From positions 84,630,001 to 84,694,000 of the forward strand of contig OX638150.1 of the NCBI GenBank assembly GCA_951804945.1: a stretch of 64,000 nt of DNA, in the 5' to 3' direction. Below the pieces are notes generated by a model that saw nothing but the letters and a program-made list of their open reading frames with translations, did not search any database and was not told where the DNA came from. Shown piece by piece: positions 8,301 to 44,600 of the stretch. The position numbers and the translations under genes are program-made. Origin of the DNA: Podarcis cretensis. Lineage: Eukaryota. The number at the start of each line of letters is the position of its first letter. The first letter of the stretch is position 1.

Positions 8301-11300
8301 CAACATCTGGAGGGCGGAGGGTTCTCCATACTAGGGGTCAGGCCACAACTACTGATATGAGGGAGCAATTGTGAAGTCATTTTACTAAAAATTGATACTT
8401 TTGTTTTCTTCCTAGGTGATGTCAGTGTGGGCATTAAATGTGATGCTCACGTATTGAGTGAAGAAGAGCAGGACATAGACTTTGGCATCATACATAATGC
8501 TAATGATACATTCACGGTTAAATACACACCCCCTGCAGCTGGGCGTTACACTGTCAAAGTGCTGTTTGCTGGAGAGGTATGTAGTTATGATGGTGGAGGG
8601 GGGGAGTTGAGATGCCATTTTATATTGCTCTCTGGTTAGCTGAAGCTTCTGTATGTATGACATTATTGTATGACTGATTCACACCTGAAGGTCCTCAGGG
8701 TGGTTTATGATGAAGAACAGCAATTATAAAAACGTATCTGATAATATATAGAGATGGTTGTAGCAGATAAAAAAACACTTAATGGGCTCTTGATTTCATG
8801 TTCTGCAGTTGTTTCTGACTCCCTTGCAGTTGTCACTGGTCAGCTTGCTCTTTAGAAATGAAACTTGTTTAATGCACAGATAATACAAAAATGGATAATA
8901 AATTTGATGTTCTCTTGCTCTGTGGCCAAGGGCTGATTGTAGTCGGAACTGATTCCAAACAAGAGTCCTTACAAGTTTCTCATTTAGCATCAGTTAAATA
9001 AAAATTTAGGGCACTTCTAAAAGGCACACACCAAGAAATAGGAATGCTCGTTAAACCAATGGCAGAAAAGATACCATGCAAAGCATCACTTCCTCTCTGT
9101 ATGGCACTGTGGCATTTGTTTGAATGACCACTTGAAATGTCGCATGATATGTGCATTTAGGCCAAGGGTGGTCTAAGCAGGATCAGCATTTGCCTTTTGA
9201 CCTTCTGGAGCAGAAGATTAGATTAATAATGGGGTTTCTGGAGTACACACAAAGAGTTGATTACTTAAGGTGGTCTCTGCCACAAAACGTTGATTTTATT
9301 TTGGTATTCTTTGTAAATAGAAGGAAGTCAATAACTTCATAGTCTGGTGTATGTTTGAATATATATATTTTGGAAAGATGCCCCGGGTGTATCATGAGCT
9401 AGTTTTTTTGTATTTTCTTACTTGAAAAGAAAACTTACATTGAAACAAAGCTTTTTTTGTCTTGAAGGAAATCCCTACAAGCCCTTTCAGAGTGAAAGTG
9501 GAACCATCACATGATGCAAGCAAGGTGAAGGCTGAAGGGCCTGGACTAAGTAAAACAGGTGAGAGTTCATCTTAACTTGGTGAGTGTGGAAGTTTGTCAT
9601 GACAGCTGTTTGCTTGTTTCTTTTGTCTTCATATTAAAACAGAGCAATACCCAGTTTGCACATACTCCTTGTGCAATGGACTCCCACTTAAGCAGAAGGG
9701 ACTTCCTTTTCCTCTCCTCCCTCGCAGCTCCTTGCATGTGTCCAAATCCAAAATGTGTTCTTTAGCCTTAGGGGACTGCAGTGGGAAGGAGAAGGAAGGG
9801 AAAATCCACTAGGACACTGTTGGATCTCACCTCTACAATTCTGTATTTAGGAGAGATCAGTCCATTGATACAAAAAAACTTAATCACAAAGAGTTCAGTT
9901 TGGTATTAGCCTGGCGTCTTCATTCTGTTAAAAGAAAAAGAAAGCATGGCACACCTTCTTTCTGAATATGCCTTAAGGGGTGATGATGATCTACTTTTTC
10001 TCCTACTTAGGTGTGGAAAATGGGAAGCCAACACATTTCACCGTGTTCACAAAAGGTGCTGGAAAAGCCCCTCTGGATGTTCAGTTCAGTGGACCGATGG
10101 CAGGAGATGCTGTCAAAGATTTGGACATAATTGACAACTATGATTATTCACACACCGTAAGATACACTCCAGTACAGCAGGTAGGATTTCCTATAAGAGG
10201 TATTAATGTGATCTCTTCTGTCTCATGGCTTAGCCCCAGGCAGCATGATAGCAGCAGGACCAGAGGAGGAGACCGTGATCTCCTCTCCCAGGGATGGTTT
10301 GGCTGAACTATCACTTTATGTTTGAAATGATGTTACGAGCTGCAACTTTCATTTTTGCCCCTAGTAGTTTAAGTATAGTGACTGCTGTGTAATCCTGCTC
10401 TTCTTGTGATCCCTTCCTGGTTTCTGCACTGCCGGGCATCTGTATTGGTCCATTGATACAGGTGGTCTTTCATCTAAGCCATGTTCATTTTTATACCGAG
10501 ATGATCCTTTGGGTATTTTGTGCAACTTTTAGGTGTCCATAATTTGGAGTAGCTGGGTTCTATAGGCTTTTGTTTTAGTTGGATCTCGGTAGCAGAAACT
10601 TCAATGCCAGCTTTCTCTTTGGCATGCCGCTCGTGACACTGGCTGGTGTAAATAGAACTGGAGTTTATGACTTCGGAAAACAGTGGTGCTGTGTACTATC
10701 CTCCAGCAACTTGCAGCAAGTTTGCAAGTGGTGGGGTGCATTTGAGGGACTGTCTTCAAAATATGGCTGACGCTTGTTGAATGTGTTCTTTGGAGGCCAG
10801 TTAACTGTTCCTGGCTTGCTTACACCTCAGAAAGTACTAATTTTTTCCTATGCTTACCAAATCCAAGATACACACGGATGACAGCTAAGCCATTTTACGC
10901 TTGATTCCTTACAGAATTGTAGAATTGTGGTTTCTACCCATTTGCATAGAGCCTTGTTTGTAAATGCTTCCTCGCATAAAAAGTTCACCGCATGTCCCAA
11001 GAACATCCCTGCTGGTTCAGGCCAAAGGCCCGTTTCGTCCAACATCCTGTTCTCACAGTGGCTGCAAATGGGACTGGAGTACAACAGCACTTTCCACAAT
11101 TCAGATTTCTAGCAACTGGTATTCAGAAGCATGATGACTTTGACAGTGTAGGCAGTACCTAGCCATTGTGGCTAGCGGCCAAGAATAGCCTCATCGTCCT
11201 TTAAAGTTATCCATGTTGTGTGTCATAAACTAGCACATTTAGGAGAAGACTACACTGGACCTTAATTCACAGGTGATGCTGAATTATTTTGTGCAGGGAA

Positions 11301-14300
11301 CCTCTTCTGCATGGAGAGCATTCAAAAATGCGACCTGCTTTCTGGGTACAGTGTAGAATATTTGGCCCATGGGCTCCCAGCTTAGATAAAGGAAGCAGAG
11401 GTAAACTCAGGAAACTGAATGCTGGCATTCTGCCAGCACTCTGTCAGGGGTTGAAAATTATAGTAGGTGGTGGCACTGTTGAGAAATACTGCCATATTTG
11501 AACACTGCACCATATGTACATTGCATTTTTGAAGCAAACGTTGATAGAGGTTCTGGAGGGGGAAGGGGAGAGCGAGCTGGTTAAAGTGAATAAGGGGTGG
11601 AGTAAGCAAACATTGCAGTCTGCTCTTTTGCTCTGTCAGTCTGTAAACATAGCAGTGACAAATACTACTTATCAAACATTAAACTGCTCCGGGCCCTGTG
11701 AAAATGTAACTTCCATTCCCAAATGCCTTATCCAAGGGATTAATTTCCAGAACTGCCACATTATATGCACCTTAGTCACAGGGAGTTAACATTCTATGCT
11801 TTGCTGGCCCGTGCCCAACTAGCTTAACTGAAAAATCTGAATTTCAAAGTCTCTTCTCTATAGCCTGCCTCTGTTCCTTCAAATTTATTAGTGTTCTATA
11901 GCAAATGAACAAAGGGAGGCTGAAGATTCTGGATGCATTAATCTTGTGCCCATATGGGAACATTGCAGACGAATGCATGGCAGTTTCTAGGCAGCAAATG
12001 CTTCGTTTCTTGGCACCTAATTTAGCTGTTTTACAGAATCAAAAGTGAAGTTGACTGTCTTGTGGTGTTAATAGGTGCAGCTCAGACTGTAACGGACGAA
12101 TGGGAAACTGGGAAAGCAGGTTGCAGCCAACATATGGGTGGCCTGTTTTGATGTTGTTGGAAATACCTTAGATACAGAATGTTGGATTTTGAATGGGTCT
12201 GTTAGGTTTAAACTATTGGAGTTGATATATAAAACACCCTTTGCCATACACAAAGGTTTTATCAGCTGAAGATTTCTTACATTTCCATTAGTGGGTTTTT
12301 CTTTTGCCCTTCCTGTATCTCTTATTTGTAGATTATAAATTTGATAGTTACGGACTTGGGAGTATACATACACAGTGTAGACATCCATGTAGAGGTCAGG
12401 AGGGTGGCAACACAAGAATGGGCCTTCTCTGCAGTGGCTTCCTGTCTGTGGAATGCTCTCCCCAGGGAAGTTTGTCAGGCACCTTCACTATACATCTTTA
12501 GGCACCAGACAAAAACATTCCTCTTCAACCAGGCCTTTGCCTGACCTGACATCCTATACCCTTTTTTAAAATGCTGGCTCTTTTCGGGGGTGGGGGTGGG
12601 TCTGGTTTTTGTTTTGATTTTATGTAAGTGATTTTTAATGTGAACCACCCTGAGACCTTCAGGTATAGGGCAGTATAAAAAGGCAAAGGACCCCTGACAG
12701 TTAAGTCCAGTCGTGAACTACTCTGGGGTTGCGGTGCTCATTTCGCTTTACTGCCCGAGGGAGCCGACGTTTGTCTGCAGACAGTTTTCCAGGTCATGTG
12801 GCCAGCATGACAAAGCCGCTTCTGGCGAAACCAGAACAGCGCACGGAAATGCCGTTTACCTACCCGCCAGAGCGGTACCTATTTATCTACTTGCACTTTG
12901 ACGTGCTTTTGAACTGCTAGGTTGGCAGGAGCAGGGACCGAACAATGGCAGCTCACCCCGTTGTGGGGATTCAAACCGCCGATCTTCCGATTGGCAAGCC
13001 CTAGGCTCAGTGGTTTAGACCACAGCGCCACCTGCGTCCTTATAGGGCGGTATAGAAATAAAACTGTAGAGGACCCCAACAGTATTTTTACACATCTATA
13101 AGAAGGGTAAAACAGCAAACCTTAACCTGCAGAGTAGTCGTCGTGTTATTTCTGATGTTTTGCCTAGTATTAAGCCCTTGCAGATTAACTGTAGTTAACT
13201 GATTTACAGTATCCTTGGTTTAAAAACTTGTATTTTGCTGAAATTTGTAAAAAATAGATTAGTTTGAAACACAGTAGGCTTAAGAGTGAAGCTAGCAAAA
13301 TACGGGTCCTTATAGGGCATGACTGGGCACAATTTCATCTATAACAGGGCAGAGCATCTTGGTACCCTAGTAAAAACATACTAGTATTTTAGCCTTTAAA
13401 TGCAGAACTTCTAAAAGCTTCATGCCAAGGCTGCATCTGCACAAAACCTGCCAATTGGGATTTCTCCTACTTGCCTCTACAACTTTGCTTGTATATACTG
13501 CCGAACAATTTTAAGTAGAACTCTGGAGGTTTGGGATAAGCTTTTGCTTCCTGGTGTCTGAAGATATGCACGATGCAGTATTAGGGGGCAGTTGTATGTC
13601 AGACTCTGCTGCTGTAGTTTCTGGCTTGTAGCAAATATCGAAATAAGAAACAATGTTTTCCAATCTGTCCAATCTCTCTAGGGTAGCATGAATGTTCAAG
13701 TGAGCTATGGTGGTGATCCCATCCCCAGGAGTCCTTTCACTGTAGGTGTTGCTGCTCCACTTGACCTAAGCAAAATTAAAGTTAATGGCCTGGAAAACAG
13801 TAAGTAACTTAAGTAACGTGAGCTTTTTTTTTAAAACTCATGTACAGAATAAACTATCTGGACTGGAGGTCAGGATGCCAGTAGACACCTGAATTGACAG
13901 ATATTACTGTTTTGTGTGTTGTGTAGAACTTCTGAGTTTGTTCAAACCTGAGAATTTTGGGTGGAGAAGGGTGTATGTATATGTTCTCGCTGTTAAACTG
14001 AAATTTGGCTGTTCTCTGCTTTGGAAAGAGCAGCCCATTTAAGGCAAGTACTTGAAGCGAGAGTTCTCCGTTCTACTGAGTCTCCGTTCTACTGAGTTTG
14101 AGTGTTAACTCTGAGGTTGGCTTGCAAAATGAAATAGTAACTGTACAAATTTTGGAATGTACAGTCTCCCTATGTCGTTGTATTGATAGCTGGTATGAAT
14201 TTTGTTCTGAATATGACCTATGGTCAGTGTAGAGAAAGAGAACATGCCATAACTGAGTCTCCTTTCCTTTCTGAAGGAGTCGAAGTAGGGAAGGATCAAG

Positions 14301-35600: not shown

Positions 35601-38600
35601 TAGACACAAGAGATGCAGGTCAGTACTGGGATTCCTAGGCTGCCAGAAAGTATCTAAGGGATGCCTGTGGGCTGCGGGTTGCCCACCTGTGATGTGGTTG
35701 ATCTGCTGTTGTTGTTCTGAGTCGCAGTTGTTCGATCATCACAGCTACTGAGCAGAGCAAAATTGCCTGACTTGTAAATTGTGGTTGCCATGATGTGGAA
35801 CAAGTTTGGATGCTCTGTCAATCTGCTAATTTATATAGGTTAAAACTCACAGCTCTGTACCACAAGCAGCATATCAAGCAAAATCCCATATGTGACCATG
35901 AGCTGAAACGGCTGGCTCACTTGGAATGGTTAATATACAATGACTGCAGTCCGTAAAGCTGTCCATCAAGATTTAGGCGGTGCTCATTGAAGCTCTTTAC
36001 AACTGCTTGCACTCATCCCAGCTGCTTTCTTTTCTAGGTTATGGTGGGATATCGCTGGCAGTTGAAGGACCTAGCAAAGTAGATATCCAGACAGAAGATC
36101 TAGAGGATGGAACTTGCAGAGTTTCGTACTTTCCAACTGTACCTGGTGTCTACATAGTATCTACTAAGTTTGCTGATGAGCACATCCCAGGTAAGAGAAA
36201 AGGAGCCTACGTAAGCGAGCCATTGCTGGTCCACTTCCCCATCAGCGCTGACCTCTTGTAATAAGTGCAGTCTATAGGACACCATCTAGGCTTCCCACCA
36301 GGGCCTTCATGTTCTGAAAATGCCTGAAGATGCTTGATTGCTAAATTTTGGAAGGCAGGATAATAAACTTCTTGCGCACCTTGAAGATGCTTTTGTTTGA
36401 GGGGTTGTCTCCTGCTGCAGTGTAACACTTATCTCTTTGCTAGTCAAACTAGAATATTGGTTTGGTACAGGTGACTCTCAACATACGTGGGGGTTGCGTT
36501 CTAGGGTGTAGCTTGCAAAGCCAAAATCACGTATAGTCAAAATACAGTGGGGTCATAGGTGGGTGGGATTGCCAAAGCCCTTTTTTCCAGGACACCTGCC
36601 CCACCTTTAATTTATTTAAAATTCGCGAAGCATGTAAAGCTGAATGTGTGTAAATAGCAAGTTAATCTGTGTAGGAAGATGGGGTTTCCTTGATAGTCAT
36701 TGGTGATAAGTCTCATGCTTAATGTGCTTAGTTAACAATGCAGTGGTCCAGCCTTCCTCAGTGGGAAAGAATTCTAAGATGGTAGTGGAAATAACTATTA
36801 GTAGACCATATGTTACTTTATTGCCTGTGAAAGTCTTTGCTTCCTGTACTGATAGATGGAACTCAGTGTTGTTTTGTCTCTACTAACTACAGGGAGCCCA
36901 TTTACTGTGAAAATAAGTGGTGAAGGAAGGGTGAAGGAAAGCATTACACGTACTCGGCGGGCTCCTTCTGTGGCCACGGTTGGAAGCTTGTGTGATCTTA
37001 ACTTAAAAATTCCAGGTAAGTTAGTTCTACTGTTTTGGAAACCATAAACCAATAAGGCATTGAATCTTCTGGGCATTCTTTGCAATCCGATTTAAAAATG
37101 GAATATTTTCCAAATACTTCTAGAGATCAGGGAAGGCATTCTTATTTAGATCGGGGCTTTGCATGGTAGGACTCACACCAATTTCTTCCTTGGCCCCATG
37201 AAGCATCAGTGGCATTTAAATTTTGCTTTCTAGCACATCACCCACTGACTCAGTTCTAATAACAAGTGACCTGGTTCACATGTAATGCTAAGCCAAACCT
37301 GGACTTAAGGTGAATGCATAGGCTATTCAAAATGATATCATTATTTTTGCCTCTTAGACCTTCCTCCTGTTGCCTGTCTACCTGAGTCTAAGCCACAATT
37401 TGACTTAGCACATGGCTGAACCCAGATTTGTTTTATTAACCAAGGTTTTTTCCTGGTTTCACAGTTTATGGTTTGTCTAGAGGAAACAAACCATGAGCTT
37501 GAGTTTGGGCTACAAGTTAAGCCAAACCATGGCTTAACTCACTGTAGCACAGCAGTACTGGATGAAGAACAATATGCCCAAAATTTCTGTTCTGGGAATT
37601 CATGCATTCATGCTATGTGTGAAGTACGGGTGTTAGGATGATCTCAGAAGGTTGTACTTGAGTCACTGTGATGCTTGAGCCATATTTTTGGAAGGGTAGG
37701 AGCGCAGTTGCTGCTATAGAGATCTGTATCATGTGGATCTCACTGGGGGAGACACATAAAATAATTGGCTGGTTAAAGAATAAATGCTATCTTGCTCATA
37801 GAGTGCACTAATATACAGAATATATTCAGCATGCTGCTTCAGTTTAATACATATTCTGACATCTGTTTTTATCTCTTTCTCTGCTGCTCTAATCAATCTT
37901 GGTCTTCCTGTCTTCTGTTCCTTTCTTTCCCTCTATTGCCTTCTCATAGTTACATGGTTCCAAATGGCTATATGTCTGGAGAGATTGTCCCGTGTTTCAC
38001 ACCAGTTCATTCCCACTTTCCTGTGTGTTGAGCAGAAGGAAAACTGCCAGACTCAATTGAGAGAATCTTGGTGTCCTAGTTTCACAAAAAAACCAGCCAA
38101 CATCAGACAACAATGTTTCCAATCGGTCCTTCTATGGGATCTACAGATGTATTACATACCTGGCTCCTTAGGGGTAGTGGGTACGTTGTAGTACTGAGGT
38201 TGTTCTATAACTGCATTACATACTTCAATAAAATCTGCTTTAAGGCGCAATGCATGGCAAGTCAGCAGCAAAAGTATTTGTTACAAAGACCTGTAACAAA
38301 CCCTCAGTCAGTAATGGAGCCTGTGGCCCTCCAGATATTGTTGAATTCCAATTTCTATCAGTTCTTAGAATGGGTGATGTTCACTGCACTAAATCCAACT
38401 CTGTTCCCAAATAAAAATAGCTTCTTCCTTTCCTTTCCTTTCCTTTCCTTTCCTTTCCTTTCCTTTCCTTTCCTTTCCTTTCCTTTCCTTTCAAGAGAAC
38501 GTCAAAGAATCTTAAGCACAACCCCTCCTGGACATATTTGTCTGTAACTTGGTAGATTTGATGTCCTCTGTTGTGGGGGGAGTGTATTATGCCTGCAAAT

Positions 38601-41600
38601 TCCATCCTCTTCTGTCAACAGGAAAAGGTCGGGGGTTTTTTACTTTCCAGTAGTTATTGGCGTGGGGGATGAAGTGGACTTAAGTTGGGTGATTCAGTTC
38701 TTGATTCATTTGTCAAGTGCTTCAGAAAGAGGCAGACTGCTTTCTGAATTGTGCACCTGCTGTATACATTGATCAAGTAAACATTCAAAAAAAGGGGGTG
38801 AATGGGCTCAAATTTAACTCATCCCCCACACTTGAATGCCTGTGACTCAGTGTGAGTGCAGTTGAGGCTCCATCCCAATTCCATATTTGCAAGAAAAGGG
38901 AGCTGCTTAATATGCTTAAATCTTTTGAAGTATTCTCTTTTCGTTTGAGAAATTCTATAGCTTCAAAAATGGATGGTTGGGGCTCAAAGAGCAATGTATT
39001 GATTTCTCATTACCTGCTGCAAGCTCTCTTAACTCTGCTTTCTGCAGTCAATGGAGACACCGTGACTTGCTTGTCAAGGGTGGTGGGTGACAAAATAATT
39101 GGATTTGTGAAGATTCTTGGTTTTTGAGGTGAACTGATAAGTATGTGCTCGTCCCTAATATATATATCTGACACTCTGCATGCACAGGTGAATGCTTGGT
39201 ATGCACTCACTTAATCGTCAGTTATGTTTTGCTGGTTGCAGTTCTGGGAAGTTGAGTTCCATCAGGTTCCCAGCAAATGTCTGCCAGGTAAAAGTGTTTT
39301 GGTGTATGATCTATAGACGAATGTGCACTCAAGGGCCACTTTGCATGTAAGGTTTGAGGGCATCTCAAACATCTGAAAGCAGCTGACTTTGGAACTTCCT
39401 ATAGATCCCAAGAACCTCAGTTGTATAGTCAACTAAACTTGGTGTCTGGGTTTCCTATGGGGAAGGTTTCAAAACAACTGAAATACTGGGGAGCTCTGCC
39501 CTCGTGCACTGGGCATTGTGTGACAGAGTAAGATGTTTAGAAACCGAATCTACCTGCTCCCCATTAATGGTCAGTTTATTTCTTTCTTTTTTAGAAATCG
39601 ACATTGGTGACATGTCAGCTCGGGTCACTAGCCCATCTGGGAGAATGACAGATGCAGAAATAGTAGAGCATGATAAAAACACGTACTGTGTCCGCTTTGT
39701 ACCACAAGAAATGGGGGTCCATAATGTGGATGTGAAATACAGAGGGCAGCATGTGCCAGGCAGTCCATTCCAGTTTACCGTTGGGCCGCTTGGTGAAGGA
39801 GGGGCCAATAAGGTCAGAGCTGGCGGTCCAGGACTTGAAAGAGCAGAGGCAGGCATCCCAGGTAAGACCTTCACTAAATTTCATCTGAATACATGGGCAT
39901 GGGTCTAAGGGCCTTGCAGTGAGAGGGGACAATAGCTGTAATCTTGGAACAGGGTACTTATACCTTGTAACACTAGAACACATTTCTGGAAGCCTAGTGA
40001 CCCTGCCTTGTGTTGCAGAGCCCCATATCACAAAGGGATTGGAGGGCCACTTGCCTGCTTCTAATTCCTGGGTGGTGGTTGTTGTTGTTAACAGCTGAGT
40101 TCAGCATCTGGACAAGGGAAGCTGGAGCTGGAGGTCTTTCCATTGCAGTAGAAGGACCAAGTAAGGCAGAAATTGCTTTTGAAGACCATAAAGATGGATC
40201 GTGTGGTGTATCATACACTGCTCAAGAGCCTGGTATGGATATCTTAAGCATTAGCAAGTTGAAATGAAGCAAAACACCACAAAAACAATTCCTCCTTGCT
40301 TAGCAAAGTTCTTATTTCTTCCAGGTAACTACGAGGTGTCCATCAAATTCAACGATGAGCATATTCCGGAAAGCCCTTACCTGGTTCCTGTGATTGCTCC
40401 TTCCGATGATGCTCGTAGGCTCACTGTTATGAGCCTTCAGGTGAGACATAAGGAAGCATCTCCCATAGCCTACCACAAGCTGATACCATCCTTGTGCTCA
40501 AGCTCCTTAAAATTATTACTTGCTCACTAGCTACACTTCTTCAGAGGAGATCCCTTGGCAAGCATGTAGGCCTTCCAAGTTAGGAAACAGCATCTGAAAA
40601 GGGGTGACTGTTTCCTAGTGCTATTCAGCTAAGGAACAACCATGGCCTCCATTCTCCCCACACAGTGGCACTAAGCAGTTCTATAAACCTTGCTGTTAAT
40701 TTTCTCACAAGGTTTGTCTATGTATGACAGTGTTCAGCAATGAAGCCATACTAAGTGGGGTAAGTTGGCTTGCATGATTGCATGCTGACAAGGCAGTTAG
40801 GCTAACATGCAACAATTTCAGCTTGGCGTATGCTCCAAGAATGCACATGCTTGAACAAATGAGGCTCTGGGGTGAGCACAGAGCAGTAATTCACACATGT
40901 GCAGATGTTGCAAAACCACAAGCTTGTACTTTAAATGATTCTTAAACAGCAGCCAAAGTCTGAGTGGATTCCAGACTTCTAGTGGCTTGAGTTTGTACAT
41001 AGTCCTGACTTTTTCGTGGTGTGCATCTAGCAACATTTTTAAGTGACTGTCTTTAATCTAAAATAAGAAGCCTGGAAGTTTCAGATTAAGCGTCATCCAG
41101 CCCATGATGTGTAGATTTGCTGCAGCTTGAGGCAGCAGTATTGGTTAAATTGCACTGCTTTTCAGAACTATGGTTTTATAGACTGACATTTGGTGTAACT
41201 TTCTAGCCAGAGCTGAACTTAAAACAAGGAGTTACAAGGACGATAATTAGCTGCTGTGGTACTGATGTTTTTCTTGTGTTTCATTTAAAGACTCTTGACA
41301 GAATGTGTGGTGTCAGCTGACTTAAACCCTGAAGAGGGAAATAAAACTGATATTTTTTTTGGGGGGGGGAGGAGTAATCTTTTTACAAAAGATGTCTTTT
41401 GGCACTCCATAAAAAACTTCCTTGGTGTATTTTAGCTGCCTGTTTCAGTTTATTTCTCTCTTGAGGATAAAACTGTTAAGTTGAAATTAAGGTAAGCTCT
41501 GCACTGAAAGCAAAAGCTCAGCATTCCAGTGACCCTCCCCCCCCCCGATGGAACTTCAATTTTCCAGTGGCTGGGGGCGGGAATCACACATGCATAACAC

Positions 41601-44600
41601 CAGGAGACTCTGTTTTTTTGTATGTGTGGTGACCGCTACTGGGGAGCAGGTGTTCATTGATATATACTTTTGGTTCCACCTTTGCTGGCATGTTAACAGA
41701 AATCTCCAAAACGTTGTATTTGTTGGCATGGGGTGAAACATGCTTTGCTTAATCAGAAAGCTCCAGGCTTAATTGTCGGTGCAATATGGAAATTTGTTTT
41801 TAGCAGCATATTAATGAGTTAGCTACACAATTAGGAAAAGAGATTTCAAGTGATTTTGGGAGTATGGCAAAGCAAATTCAGCCCAGACAACCATAAAGAT
41901 TTGGGCAGCGCAAGCATTTTGTTTTAAAGCTAATGCATTTGATGATTTTGGGGCTGGCATCCTACATTTGTAGCAAAATGATGACCTTGCATACTTATAG
42001 TCAGACCAGAAAAAAGTGTGTGGGTAGACAAACTTAACCAAGCCCACACTTTGGGAATGTATTGTACTGCTGTTNNNNNNNNNNNNNNNNNNNNNNNNNN
42101 NNNNNNNNNNNNNNNNNNNNNNNNNNNNNNNNNNNNNNNNNNNNNNNNNNNNNNNNNNNNNNNNNNNNNNNNNNNNNNNNNNNNNNNNNNNNNNNNNNNN
42201 NNNNNNNNNNNNNNNNNNNNNCCCTGCCCTCCCTGGCCAGAACCGGGATCAGGGTGCTAACACCAATCAAAATTACAATAAAACATAATGGGGGGGGGGG
42301 GAAACAGTTAATTAAAATACAGGTTAAAATACCATTTAAAATGCTACCTCATTTTAGTAGTAGCCCATAAATCAAAACTATAAGGGGAGGGACACATAAG
42401 GGTCAGACTGAGTCCAAACCAAAGGCCAGGCGGGACAGCTCTGTCTTGCAGGCCCTGCGGAAAGATGTCAAGTCCCTCAGGGCTCTAGTCTCTTGTGACA
42501 GAGCGTTCCACCAAGTTGGGGCCAGTACTGAAAAGGCCCTGGCCCTAGTTGAGACAAATCTAACCACCTTGCGGCTCAGGACCTCTAAAGTGTTGTTATT
42601 TGTGGACCTTAAGGTCCTCTGCAGGGCATACCAGGAGAAAAGATCACATCACTTAGTGGTATCTGGAACCCTCAGAACTAGAAAGTTAAAAATAAAAAAT
42701 ATTCCTAGTTTTAAGACTTGAGAATACTCAGTTGAGAAGAGCATAACATATAGCAGGGTTAGGGGTGCTTGTCAGACACATTTTTGTAAATAGTGAGACT
42801 GATAACGTTTTTCCACGGCCATAACTTCCGTGATGCAATAACTTTACATTTGCAAATGTGGTACAGGGCTACCACGTGTCAAATATTGGTTCTGTGTTAG
42901 ACAAAATATGCAAAGCTGCTGCTATATTTCGGAGACAGTAAAAGACCGAACTGTTATATATTCCTTGCAAGCCAAATGTCAATATGTATGTGAGGATCTT
43001 ACTATTGCGTTGTTAGGAGTCTGGGTTGAAGGTTAACCAGCCAGCATCCTTCGCTATAAGGCTTAACGGGGCAAAGGGCAAGATTGACGCTAAAGTGCAT
43101 AGCCCAATTGGAGCTGTAGAAGAATGCCATGTTTCTGAACTGGAGCAAGGTAAGGATGTGTCGTAAACTTGGTACTCAAAACTGCTTTAAATATGTAAAC
43201 AGTCAAAATGGTTGTAAGAATTAAACAGGAGGTGGCCATTTCAGTTCATGCCAGTATAGAAACATGTTCAACAGTGATTAGATGCTTATTGTACAAAGGA
43301 CTGTGTTCCACAAAGGAGTTTAGTAGTACTTCCTTGGTGGTAAAAGGAAAAAAGGAAGTACTGAACAAAATACTTCCGCATAACCCATTTTAAGGCTAAT
43401 TGGCATGTGCACTTTACCACAACCCCAGTTGTTGTTTGTTTGTGCAGAGAGGAAGTCCTGTGAACAGAGGTGTGCATGAGGTTGCATGTGCTAATAGCTC
43501 AGTTGAATGGCTGCATATGCATCTTTCTGCACATTAGAGAGATTGCTTCACAACTTTTAGCTAAATTGTGGACCAAGGAAAAGTTATAATCCTACATAGG
43601 GCAGGTACCTTCCTCAACCTCAGCCCTCCAGATGTTTTGAGACTACAATTCCCATCAACCCTGACCACTGGTCCTGTTAGCTAGGGATCATGGGAGTTGT
43701 AGGCCAAAAACATCTGGAGGGCTGAGGTTGAGGAAGCCTGCTGTAGATATTTCAACTCTAGCTACCTGAAATGGCTCCTGTCTTTCCATCCTGCCCTATA
43801 CATTTTCGTTAACTCTTTCTCCCCTCATCCTTCACTTTTGAAAATACATGGTATACCTATAGGCTGATTCCAACAGGGTCTCATCTGATGCTGGTGCCAA
43901 TTTGTTTAAATTGGCCTTACATTTTTGATAGCCATTTCTAGCTACTTTTAACCATGCAGATTTACCATTCTAGTATTCTATGTTTCCTAGACAGTTTTCA
44001 GACTAGTCACTGATTAAAAGGAACAAGCTATACTCAATTGTGCTATAATTATAATATTTGCTGTATAATAAAGAAATGCAGTTTTCTACCAGTGCAAGTG
44101 GATAACCATTTTGCAGCACGCTGGTGGTTAAAGCAATAAGAACGGATTTTAAAGTGACAGCTCCAACTCCTATGCATGTTCTCCACATGAGGATTGCATT
44201 TCAGAGGCTTTGCTTCTTCTCCTCAGGCATGTTCCATGTGCCACCTTCCCATGGCCCAGACATGGCAGTCATAGAAATAGTTTTAGATGCTGTGTGCTCT
44301 GCTTTTTAACATCAAGTTCTCAACCTAAATTTATGATGATTTGCCTGTATATGTATTGCAGATAAATACGCTGTTCGGTTCATCCCGCGTGAAAACGGCA
44401 TTCATTCTATTGATGTGAAGTTCAACGGTAGCCATGTGGTAGGCAGTCCTTTTAAAGTTAGAGTCGGGGAACCAGGTCAAGCAGATAGCCCAGCTCTTGT
44501 CACCGCCTATGGGCCAGGCCTTGAGAGTGGCGTAACAGGTGAGTGGTTTCCTCTTTCTGCATTAGAATTCTGAAAAATAGGATGGTCTTGACCCAGAGAT

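What the first reader, a model, noticed from the sequence alone, without database searches (positions are those of the whole stretch)
37950..38180. Hidden filamin-C-type muscle Ig20 insertion exon inside reptile FLNB
Seen: between the exon ending ...LNLKIP (37015) and the exon starting EIDIG (39595) there is a long pyrimidine tract ending ctcatag|, a 231-nt stop-free segment and a good donor (tgg|gtacgt). It is phase 1 at both ends, so inclusion keeps the frame and adds 77 aa: [77 protein letters not shown]. Established (sequence recalled): filamin C carries an ~81-aa insertion at exactly this junction ([40 protein letters not shown]...FPAV...GSFG...), linked to Z-disc targeting and Xin binding and usually described as unique to FLNC. 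Without gaps the two share WFQM, ERL.R, T23, E28, E31, T35, E39, F57 and V60, then GS.G with one gap. Inference: the insertion exon predates the vertebrate genome duplications and survives in squamate FLNB, possibly giving a sarcomeric FLNB isoform. Several FLNC Arg positions read Gln or Cys here, a CpG-decay-like pattern, so selection may be relaxed.
Basis: partly seen in the sequence, partly recalled or inferred. Interest (0 to 1): 0.9.

Follow-up and report, generated by a model that had tools for sequence, protein, structure and literature searches.

The report
FLNC-type insertion exon inside lizard FLNB
An intron of this reptile's filamin B gene holds an intact but strongly diverged copy of the extra exon thought to be unique to muscle filamin C, so that exon predates the split of the two genes; whether it is still spliced into mRNA could not be tested.

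Summary
At 37950-38180 (+) lies a 231-nt stop-free segment bounded by AG and GT. It is phase 1 at both ends. It sits in the filamin intron that splits Ig20 after ...LNLKIP, which is where FLNC carries its extra exon. The gene is FLNB: its exons are 69-100% identical (most 82-100%) to a skink FLNB model.

Homology to the FLNC insert is real. I slid tool-derived FLNC insert sequences, without gaps, over all 127,762 six-frame positions of the window. The best position is 37949(+) for all but one reference/length combination tried. The score is 48 against a runner-up of 19 (exact P 2.9e-9 per position, E 3.7e-4 for the window). Against a fish FLNC exon all 77 codons align in register without gaps (17 identities).

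Several features argue for long-term selection as a coding cassette exon:
- the open frame (1.3% of intron positions are stop-free over that length);
- the in-frame length;
- an 86-nt pyrimidine tract;
- a 105-nt AG-free zone upstream.

Other features argue for relaxed constraint:
- weak splice-site scores;
- intron-like CpG depletion;
- Arg replaced by Gln or Cys;
- loss of the FLNC basic, strand-prone motif;
- no trace of the exon in another sauropsid FLNB locus;
- absence from the skink gene model.

My verdict is a true paralogous exon, probably still splice-competent. A FLNC-like sarcomeric function is not supported.

The parts
36893..37015 (+). Upstream FLNB exon (41 aa, ...[41 protein letters not shown] + first base of the next codon), with donor CAG|gtaagt. 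It corresponds to the cassette that is missing in the hit named 'FLNB isoform 12, partial'.
37843..37947 (+). AG-free zone of 105 nt. It contains an 86-nt pyrimidine tract (37862-37947; 82.5% C+T over 80 nt) that ends at the acceptor, and a possible distant branch point (ctaat, near 37890).
   Evidence: Only 3 regions of the window reach 82.5% pyrimidine over 80 nt. The 27 real FLNB acceptors reach at most 68% pyrimidine and have AG-free zones of 8-48 nt.
37948..37949 (+). Acceptor AG of the candidate exon.
   Evidence: the PWM score is low (better than only 3 of 27 real acceptors; top 16% of intronic decoys)
37950..38180 (+). Candidate cassette exon: 231 nt, phase 1/1, 77 codons, stop-free. 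It is a paralogue of the FLNC Ig20 insertion exon.
37955..38068 (+). Best-conserved N-terminal part (WFQM....ERL.R......T....E..E...T...E): 13 of 40 residues identical to FLNC, 45% nucleotide identity over the first 45 codons.
38181..38186 (+). Donor gtacgt. It is weaker than most real donors (better than only 2 of 27) but lies in the top 3.2% of intronic GT decoys.
38251..38256 (+). TGCATG 71 nt downstream of the donor. This is an RBFOX-type motif, but the hexamer is common in this window (52 copies), so it is only suggestive.
38425..38492 (+). (TTCCT)13.6 microsatellite, a second pyrimidine block downstream of the exon.
39595..39861 (+). Downstream FLNB exon ([14 protein letters not shown]...AGIP), the rest of Ig20 and the start of Ig21.

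Best explanation
The segment is a genuine paralogue of the FLNC Ig20 insertion exon, retained in the orthologous intron of FLNB in this squamate-type genome. Shown: it has the same intron and the same phase (1/1), its length is a multiple of three, and its N-terminus matches FLNC (WFQM-x4-ERL-x-R). It is also colinear without gaps with a fish FLNC exon over all 77 codons. Inferred: it has been kept as a translated cassette exon for most of the time since the FLNB/FLNC split. It is most likely still splice-competent as a weak, regulated alternative exon. The weak splice sites, the very long pyrimidine tract and AG-free zone, and the second pyrimidine block downstream fit the architecture typical of PTB-repressed, tissue-specific exons. 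Inclusion would insert 77 residues into Ig20, right after the strand-bearing segment encoded by the 41-aa upstream cassette, as in FLNC. The peptide itself is under relaxed constraint. Only the N-terminal motif and a few hydrophobic and Gly positions survive, and the FLNC basic, phosphorylated, strand-forming core is lost. It therefore probably acts as a spacer or linker, or has a weak function, and not as a FLNC-like Z-disc targeting module.
For: Gene identity: the window's exons are 69-100% identical (most 82-100%) to Lerista edwardsae KAJ6668349.1 (P0225), which carries FLNB-type sequence such as ...[24 protein letters not shown].... The region matches FLNB-named fragments better than FLNA or FLNC ones.
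Homology: the ungapped scan puts 37949(+) first among 127,762 positions, score 48 against 19. The exact tail probability is 2.9e-9 per position, E=3.7e-4 window-wide. 37949(+) is first in 11 of the 12 reference/length combinations tried; only the 77-residue L006 reference fails. BLASTP against P0153 aligns the peptide to the residues directly after LNLKIPGN, 25 bits, E=7e-5. The tblastn top hit in the window has E=0.004. The C-terminal 32 residues are in register with the fish FLNC exon, with 5 identities and shuffle p=0.001.
Position: the FLNC insert is a single extra exon of 243 bp inside Ig20 (PMC2192634). The FLNC exons in L006 (249 nt) and L004 have the same phase.
Constraint: 76 stop-free codons occur at only 1.3% of intron positions. 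The pyrimidine tract is one of only 3 such regions in 64 kb and abuts the AG. The AG-free zone is 105 nt against 8-48 nt for real exons. Two of the three CpGs in the exon and its donor lie in the conserved Arg15 codon and at donor position +5.
Against: No protein in the large collections contains the peptide, though length limits and clustering make that a weak negative.
The skink FLNB model lacks the insert.
L001, another sauropsid-type FLNB locus, has only a 573-nt intron with no trace of the exon.
The donor and acceptor score below nearly all real sites.
CpG o/e is 0.18, which is intron-like.
Arg positions read Q/C/W, and the peptide is rich in Cys, Trp and Gln.
AlphaFold gives pLDDT 45 for the peptide against 76-85 for the FLNC core.
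A profile HMM of four FLNC inserts ranks the exon first in the window, but only at E=0.49.
Confidence: 0.55

Rival explanations
1. Recently dead fossil. The exon was a functional FLNB cassette for most of vertebrate history, but it is no longer spliced, or only at noise level, in this lineage. It is decaying and simply has not yet acquired a stop, a frameshift or a splice-site lesion.
For: Splice-site scores are weak. CpG o/e is intron-like and GC content is close to intron level. Arg codons show a CpG-decay pattern. The FLNC strand-forming basic core is lost and the fold confidence is low. The exon is absent from the skink gene model and from the L001 FLNB locus, which shows that FLNB can do without it. 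No protein with this peptide was found.
Against: There is no disabling lesion at all: the frame is open (1.3% by chance), AG and GT are intact, and the length is in frame. The register is ungapped over 77 codons. The exceptional pyrimidine tract and AG-free zone are still in place.
Confidence: 0.38
2. The exon is not an inheritance from the genome duplications. It was copied from FLNC into FLNB by an ancient gene conversion or exon transfer.
For: None specific. The data show only homology plus the same position and phase.
Against: The position and phase are identical within the homologous intron. Nucleotide identity is only 45% in the best part and at background level beyond it, so any transfer would itself be very old. 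FLNA introns at this site are tiny and empty (read-through ORFs P0022, P0078, P0134 and P0135), which fits loss and not gain.
Confidence: 0.05
3. A chance open reading frame with chance resemblance to FLNC.
For: HMMER with a four-sequence FLNC profile gives only E=0.49. phmmer against 1.84 billion proteins found no filamin.
Against: The segment is the unique best position in the whole window for both FLNC references and for 11 of the 12 reference/length combinations tried. The exact E is 3.7e-4 for the window, before counting that it lies in the one expected intron, on the right strand, directly after an AG and in the right phase.
Confidence: 0.02

Closest known systems
FLNC (gamma-filamin) Ig-like domain 20 insertion exon (243 bp, 78-82 aa by different counts; van der Ven et al. 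2000, PMC2192634)
   Same: It lies in the same intron of the filamin gene (after ...LNLKIP, before E..DM.A.VTSP) and has the same phase 1/1. Its length is a multiple of three (231 against 243-261 nt). The N-terminal motif is shared (W-F-Q-M-x4-E-R-L-x-R plus T23, E28, E31, T35, E39), as are F57, V60, L65, G72 and G75 against the fish FLNC exon. One fish FLNC locus (L004) also has a very long pyrimidine tract upstream (87.5% over 80 nt).
   Different: It sits in FLNB, not FLNC. It is only about 22% identical, whereas the first ~50 residues of the FLNC insert are virtually invariant from fish to mammal. It lacks the [17 protein letters not shown] basic, phosphorylated core, is rich in Cys, Trp and Gln, has no confident predicted structure, and has weaker splice sites. 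Its expression is unknown.
FLNB/FLNA 'var-1' cassette (the 41 aa between repeats 19 and 20)
   Same: It is also a regulated cassette in the same Ig19-21 mechanosensory region. In the window it is the exon immediately upstream (36893-37015), and it is skipped in the hit named 'FLNB isoform 12, partial' (P0013).
   Different: That cassette removes the strand that masks Ig21. The candidate would add 77 residues after it. var-1 is well conserved and well documented, and the candidate is neither.
Canonical FLNB and FLNA as described in the literature ('insertion ... missing in FLNA and B', PMC7216277)
   Same: The flanking exons here are ordinary FLNB exons.
   Different: This FLNB intron is 2.58 kb and carries the extra exon. 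FLNA introns at this site are 27-44 codons long and empty, and the L001 FLNB intron is 573 nt and empty.

Membership tests
FLNC-type Ig20 insertion exon | A separate exon inside the intron that splits Ig-like domain 20 (after ...LNLKIP) | tested here: met
   the candidate lies between the exon ending at 37015 and the exon starting at 39595
FLNC-type Ig20 insertion exon | Phase 1 at both ends and an in-frame length of about 240 nt | tested here: met
   231 nt, phase 1/1. The FLNC exon in L006 is 249 nt with the same phase; the human exon is 243 bp.
FLNC-type Ig20 insertion exon | Sequence homology to the FLNC insert | tested here: met
   Unique best position in the window, E=3.7e-4. BLASTP E=7e-5. 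C-terminal part in register with fish FLNC, p=0.001. The profile HMM alone was not significant, E=0.49.
FLNC-type Ig20 insertion exon | The conserved basic T/R-alternating core with Ser phosphosites ([17 protein letters not shown]), predicted to be strand-rich | tested here: not met
   The candidate reads [17 protein letters not shown]. AlphaFold gives pLDDT 45 and no strands for the candidate, against three strands at pLDDT 76-85 for the FLNC exon.
FLNC-type Ig20 insertion exon | Inclusion in mRNA, especially in striated muscle | not testable with these tools
FLNC-type Ig20 insertion exon | Z-disc targeting and binding of myotilin, Xin or aciculin | not testable with these tools
   This needs experiments. 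Only the N-terminal motif is shared.
FLNB orthologue (host gene) | Exons closest to FLNB rather than FLNA or FLNC | tested here: met
   Exons are 69-100% identical (most 82-100%) to the skink FLNB model P0225 across aa 361-2496. The junction region matches FLNB-named fragments P0013 and P0231 rather than FLNA (P0124) or FLNC (P0153, P0141).

The most novel reading that the evidence does not exclude
The Ig20 insertion is not a FLNC invention. The ancestral vertebrate filamin already had this cassette exon, and FLNB of squamates (perhaps of other non-mammalian vertebrates too) still makes an insert-bearing isoform through a PTB/RBFOX-type regulated weak exon. The description 'unique to FLNC' would then be a mammal-centred view.
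Probability: 0.45. Interest if true: 0.65.

Novelty: new member of a known kind. Interest (0 to 1): 0.5.

Why it matters
Every review describes the Ig20 insertion as unique to filamin C and as the reason for its Z-disc targeting and muscle disease links (PMC2192634, PMC7216277). A paralogous exon at the same place in FLNB dates the insertion to before the FLNB/FLNC split. It also shows which residues survive about 450 million years of divergence: W-F-x-M, E-R-L-x-R and a few hydrophobic and Gly positions. Those residues are candidates for the ancestral core of the module. The element is also a natural example of a cassette exon that keeps its frame and its splicing architecture while its peptide drifts. 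If it is expressed, it would define a new FLNB isoform in reptiles.

Tried and rejected
**Searches with the peptide.**
- The search for homologous proteins found no candidate. Its length filter excludes full-length filamins.
- phmmer against 1.84 billion cluster representatives gave only three repeat-protein artefacts and no filamin. Clustering at 50% identity can hide insert-bearing isoforms.
- The PDB search gave nothing.
- Pfam gave only sub-threshold noise.
- Rfam on 36800-39900 gave nothing.
- No copy of the intron exists elsewhere in the window, so it is not a repeat or transposon.

**Homology tests that were weak.**
- A profile HMM of four near-identical FLNC inserts ranks the exon first, but at E=0.49.
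- Gapped local alignment of the C-terminal half against the L006/P0191-type FLNC insert was not significant. Similarity appeared only with the fish reference, which lacks the extra Gly residues.
- The RBFOX motif is not significant, because TGCATG is frequent in this window.

Exons were searched one by one, by reference.
- Some protein hits (P0008, P0013, P0134, P0153 and others) may come from human or primate material. They were read only to label paralogues. No contig of theirs was fetched or searched.

Full report
**Observation.**
- A pyrimidine-rich stretch ends in ...cttctcatag, with AG at 37948-37949.
- A 231-nt segment follows at 37950-38180.
- A donor tgg|gtacgt follows, with GT at 38181-38182.
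The other two frames contain stops.
- The upstream exon ends at 37015 with ...LNLKIP plus one base, G. The downstream exon starts at 39595 (AA ATC GAC..., giving EIDIGDMS).
- Inclusion therefore reads G+TT = V at the start and G+AA = E at the end, and keeps the frame.
- Both flanking exons are filamin repeats (PF00630, E=7e-17 and lower).

**Host gene.**
- tblastn with a full-length skink protein found through cluster look-up (Lerista edwardsae KAJ6668349.1, P0225, 2496 aa) maps 36 colinear exons in the window. They run from residue 361 to the C-terminus, at 69-100% identity (most 82-100%).
- The junction region matches fragments that their sources name FLNB (P0013, P0231), not FLNA (P0124, P0126) or FLNC (P0052, P0141, P0153).
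- The gene is therefore an FLNB orthologue in a squamate-like genome. The species itself was not identified.

**What is known.**
- van der Ven et al. [quoted passage not shown]
- Reviews state that the insertion is missing in FLNA and FLNB (PMC7216277).
- My paper searches found no report of an FLNB counterpart.

**FLNC reference sequences, taken from tools and not from memory.**
- Searches around the conserved flanking exons returned a mammalian-type FLNC fragment with the first 38 residues of the insert (P0153) and a genomic read-through ORF with nearly the whole insert (P0191).
- A metagenome scan returned host-DNA contigs with complete FLNC insertion exons. These are L006:547-795 (249 nt) and L004 (fish type, starting at 146).
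- The first ~50 residues of the FLNC insert are virtually identical from fish to mammal; the C-terminal part varies.

**Homology test.**
- I slid the first 40 residues of the FLNC insert, without gaps, over every one of the 127,762 six-frame positions of the window.
  - The best position is 37949(+), the exon start in its reading frame, with BLOSUM62 score 48.
  - The next best score anywhere is 19. The null distribution has mean -42 and SD 13.8.
  - An exact convolution gives P=2.9e-9 per position, or E=3.7e-4 for the whole window. The same null model predicts 2.3 positions at or above 19, so it is calibrated.
- The result does not depend on the length I chose. With the L006 reference at 20-60 residues, and with the L004 reference at 20-77 residues, 37949(+) is always first. 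Only the 77-residue L006 reference fails.
- BLASTP aligns the peptide to P0153 directly after LNLKIPGN (25 bits, E=7e-5).
- tblastn of that FLNC fragment has the exon as its top hit in the window (E=0.004).
- The signal sits in the single intron, strand, phase and AG-adjacent register where a homologue is expected, so chance is excluded.
- Weaker results:
  - a profile HMM of the four near-identical FLNC inserts ranks the exon first, but only at E=0.49;
  - phmmer against 1.84 billion representatives found no filamin.
- Nucleotide identity to the L006 FLNC exon is 45% in the first 45 codons and 27%, the background level, beyond that.
- Against the fish FLNC exon, which lacks two Gly residues, the C-terminal part is also in register. 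F57, V60, L65, G72 and G75 are identical, with shuffle p=0.001-0.005. All 77 codons thus align without a gap, with 17 identities.

**Signs of selection as an exon.**
- Only 1.3% of intron positions in this gene give 76 stop-free codons.
- The length differs from the FLNC exons by multiples of three, and the register is ungapped over the whole exon. Neutral DNA this diverged would carry indels.
- The 80 nt before the AG are 82.5% pyrimidine.
  - Only three regions of the 64-kb window reach that level.
  - The 27 constitutive FLNB acceptors reach at most 68%.
- The AG-free zone upstream is 105 nt, against 8-48 nt for the real exons.
- A long AG-free zone with a distant branch point, weak core sites and pyrimidine blocks on both sides (a (TTCCT)13.6 array lies at 38425-38492) is the architecture I know from PTB-regulated tissue-specific exons. 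That link is inference from general knowledge.
- One fish FLNC locus has an equally long tract (87.5%). Another FLNC locus (L006, 56%) does not.

**Signs of relaxed constraint.**
- The donor scores better than only 2 of 27 real donors, though it is in the top 3.2% of decoy GTs. The acceptor core scores better than only 3 of 27.
- CpG o/e is 0.18, compared with 0.26 for introns and 0.35 for exons.
- FLNC Arg positions read Gln, Cys or Trp in 5 of 8 cases, against 4 of 37 other positions (Fisher p=0.004). Four of the five CGN Arg codons in the L006 FLNC exon read CAR or TGY here.
- The peptide has 9 Gln, 5 Cys and 3 Trp. It lacks the basic alternating core [17 protein letters not shown].
- Single-sequence AlphaFold gives three long strands at pLDDT 76-85 for the FLNC exon. 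For the candidate it gives pLDDT 45 and low-confidence helices.
- The skink FLNB gene model has no 77-aa insert. It has an odd GEFRPS at the junction.
- L001 is a second FLNB locus. In the downstream exon it is 97% identical to the widely sequenced P0009/P0014 group and 86% to the skink. It is probably an archosaur, but that is not proven.
  - Its intron at this site is only 573 nt (9476-10048).
  - The intron has stops in all frames and no similarity to the candidate or to FLNC.
- FLNA read-through ORFs show tiny, empty introns at this site.
- The exon is therefore dispensable for FLNB in other lineages.

**Interpretation.**
- An element that is still colinear with FLNC codon for codon, open, in frame and equipped with AG, GT and an exceptional pyrimidine tract cannot have been neutral for long. 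It must have been a translated cassette exon through most of the lineage's history.
- No disabling lesion is visible. I therefore favour a still splice-competent, weakly included, regulated cassette whose peptide is only loosely constrained (0.55).
- The main rival is a recently inactivated fossil (0.38).
It remains untested.

**Limits.**
- Protein hits that may derive from human or primate material were not followed up.

Noticed in passing
window 36893-37015: This 41-aa exon directly upstream of the candidate is the cassette missing in the hit named 'FLNB isoform 12, partial [Pan troglodytes]' (P0013 joins ...ADEHVP directly to EINSSDMS). Two cassette exons would therefore sit side by side in the Ig19-20 region.
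   Followed up: partly
P0225 (Lerista edwardsae KAJ6668349.1), residues ~2011-2016: The skink FLNB gene model has six odd residues, GEFRPS, between LNLKIP and EIDIGDMS. This could be an annotation artefact or a micro-exon at the same junction. The locus could not be fetched.
   Followed up: no
L006:549-794 (FLNC insertion exon): Single-sequence AlphaFold predicts a three-stranded beta unit (strands 7-18, 21-33, 39-49; pLDDT 76-85) for the FLNC insert.
   Followed up: no
L001:9476-10048: An FLNB locus from host DNA in a JGI metagenome (97% identical in the downstream exon to the P0009/P0014 group) has a 573-nt intron at this site without any exon relic. The length is close to the human FLNC total of 136+243+196 = 575 bp, which is probably coincidence.
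   Followed up: partly
window 38425-38492: A perfect (TTCCT)13.6 microsatellite lies 245 nt downstream of the candidate exon. It is one of only three regions of extreme pyrimidine content in the window.
   Followed up: partly
window 10181-14266 and 42075-42221: Residues 828-863 of the skink FLNB found no exon between 10180 and 14267. A 147-base N run lies at 42075-42221 and was left untouched.
   Followed up: no
L004:146-~405: The fish FLNC insertion exon reads NWFHM instead of NWFQM and is 87 codons long. Its short upstream intron is very pyrimidine-rich (87.5% over the last 80 nt) and its downstream intron starts with a (GT)n run.
   Followed up: partly
window, + strand: TGCATG occurs 52 times on the + strand of the 64-kb window, about three times the uniform expectation. 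Single RBFOX-type motifs near exons are therefore weak evidence in this genome.
   Followed up: no
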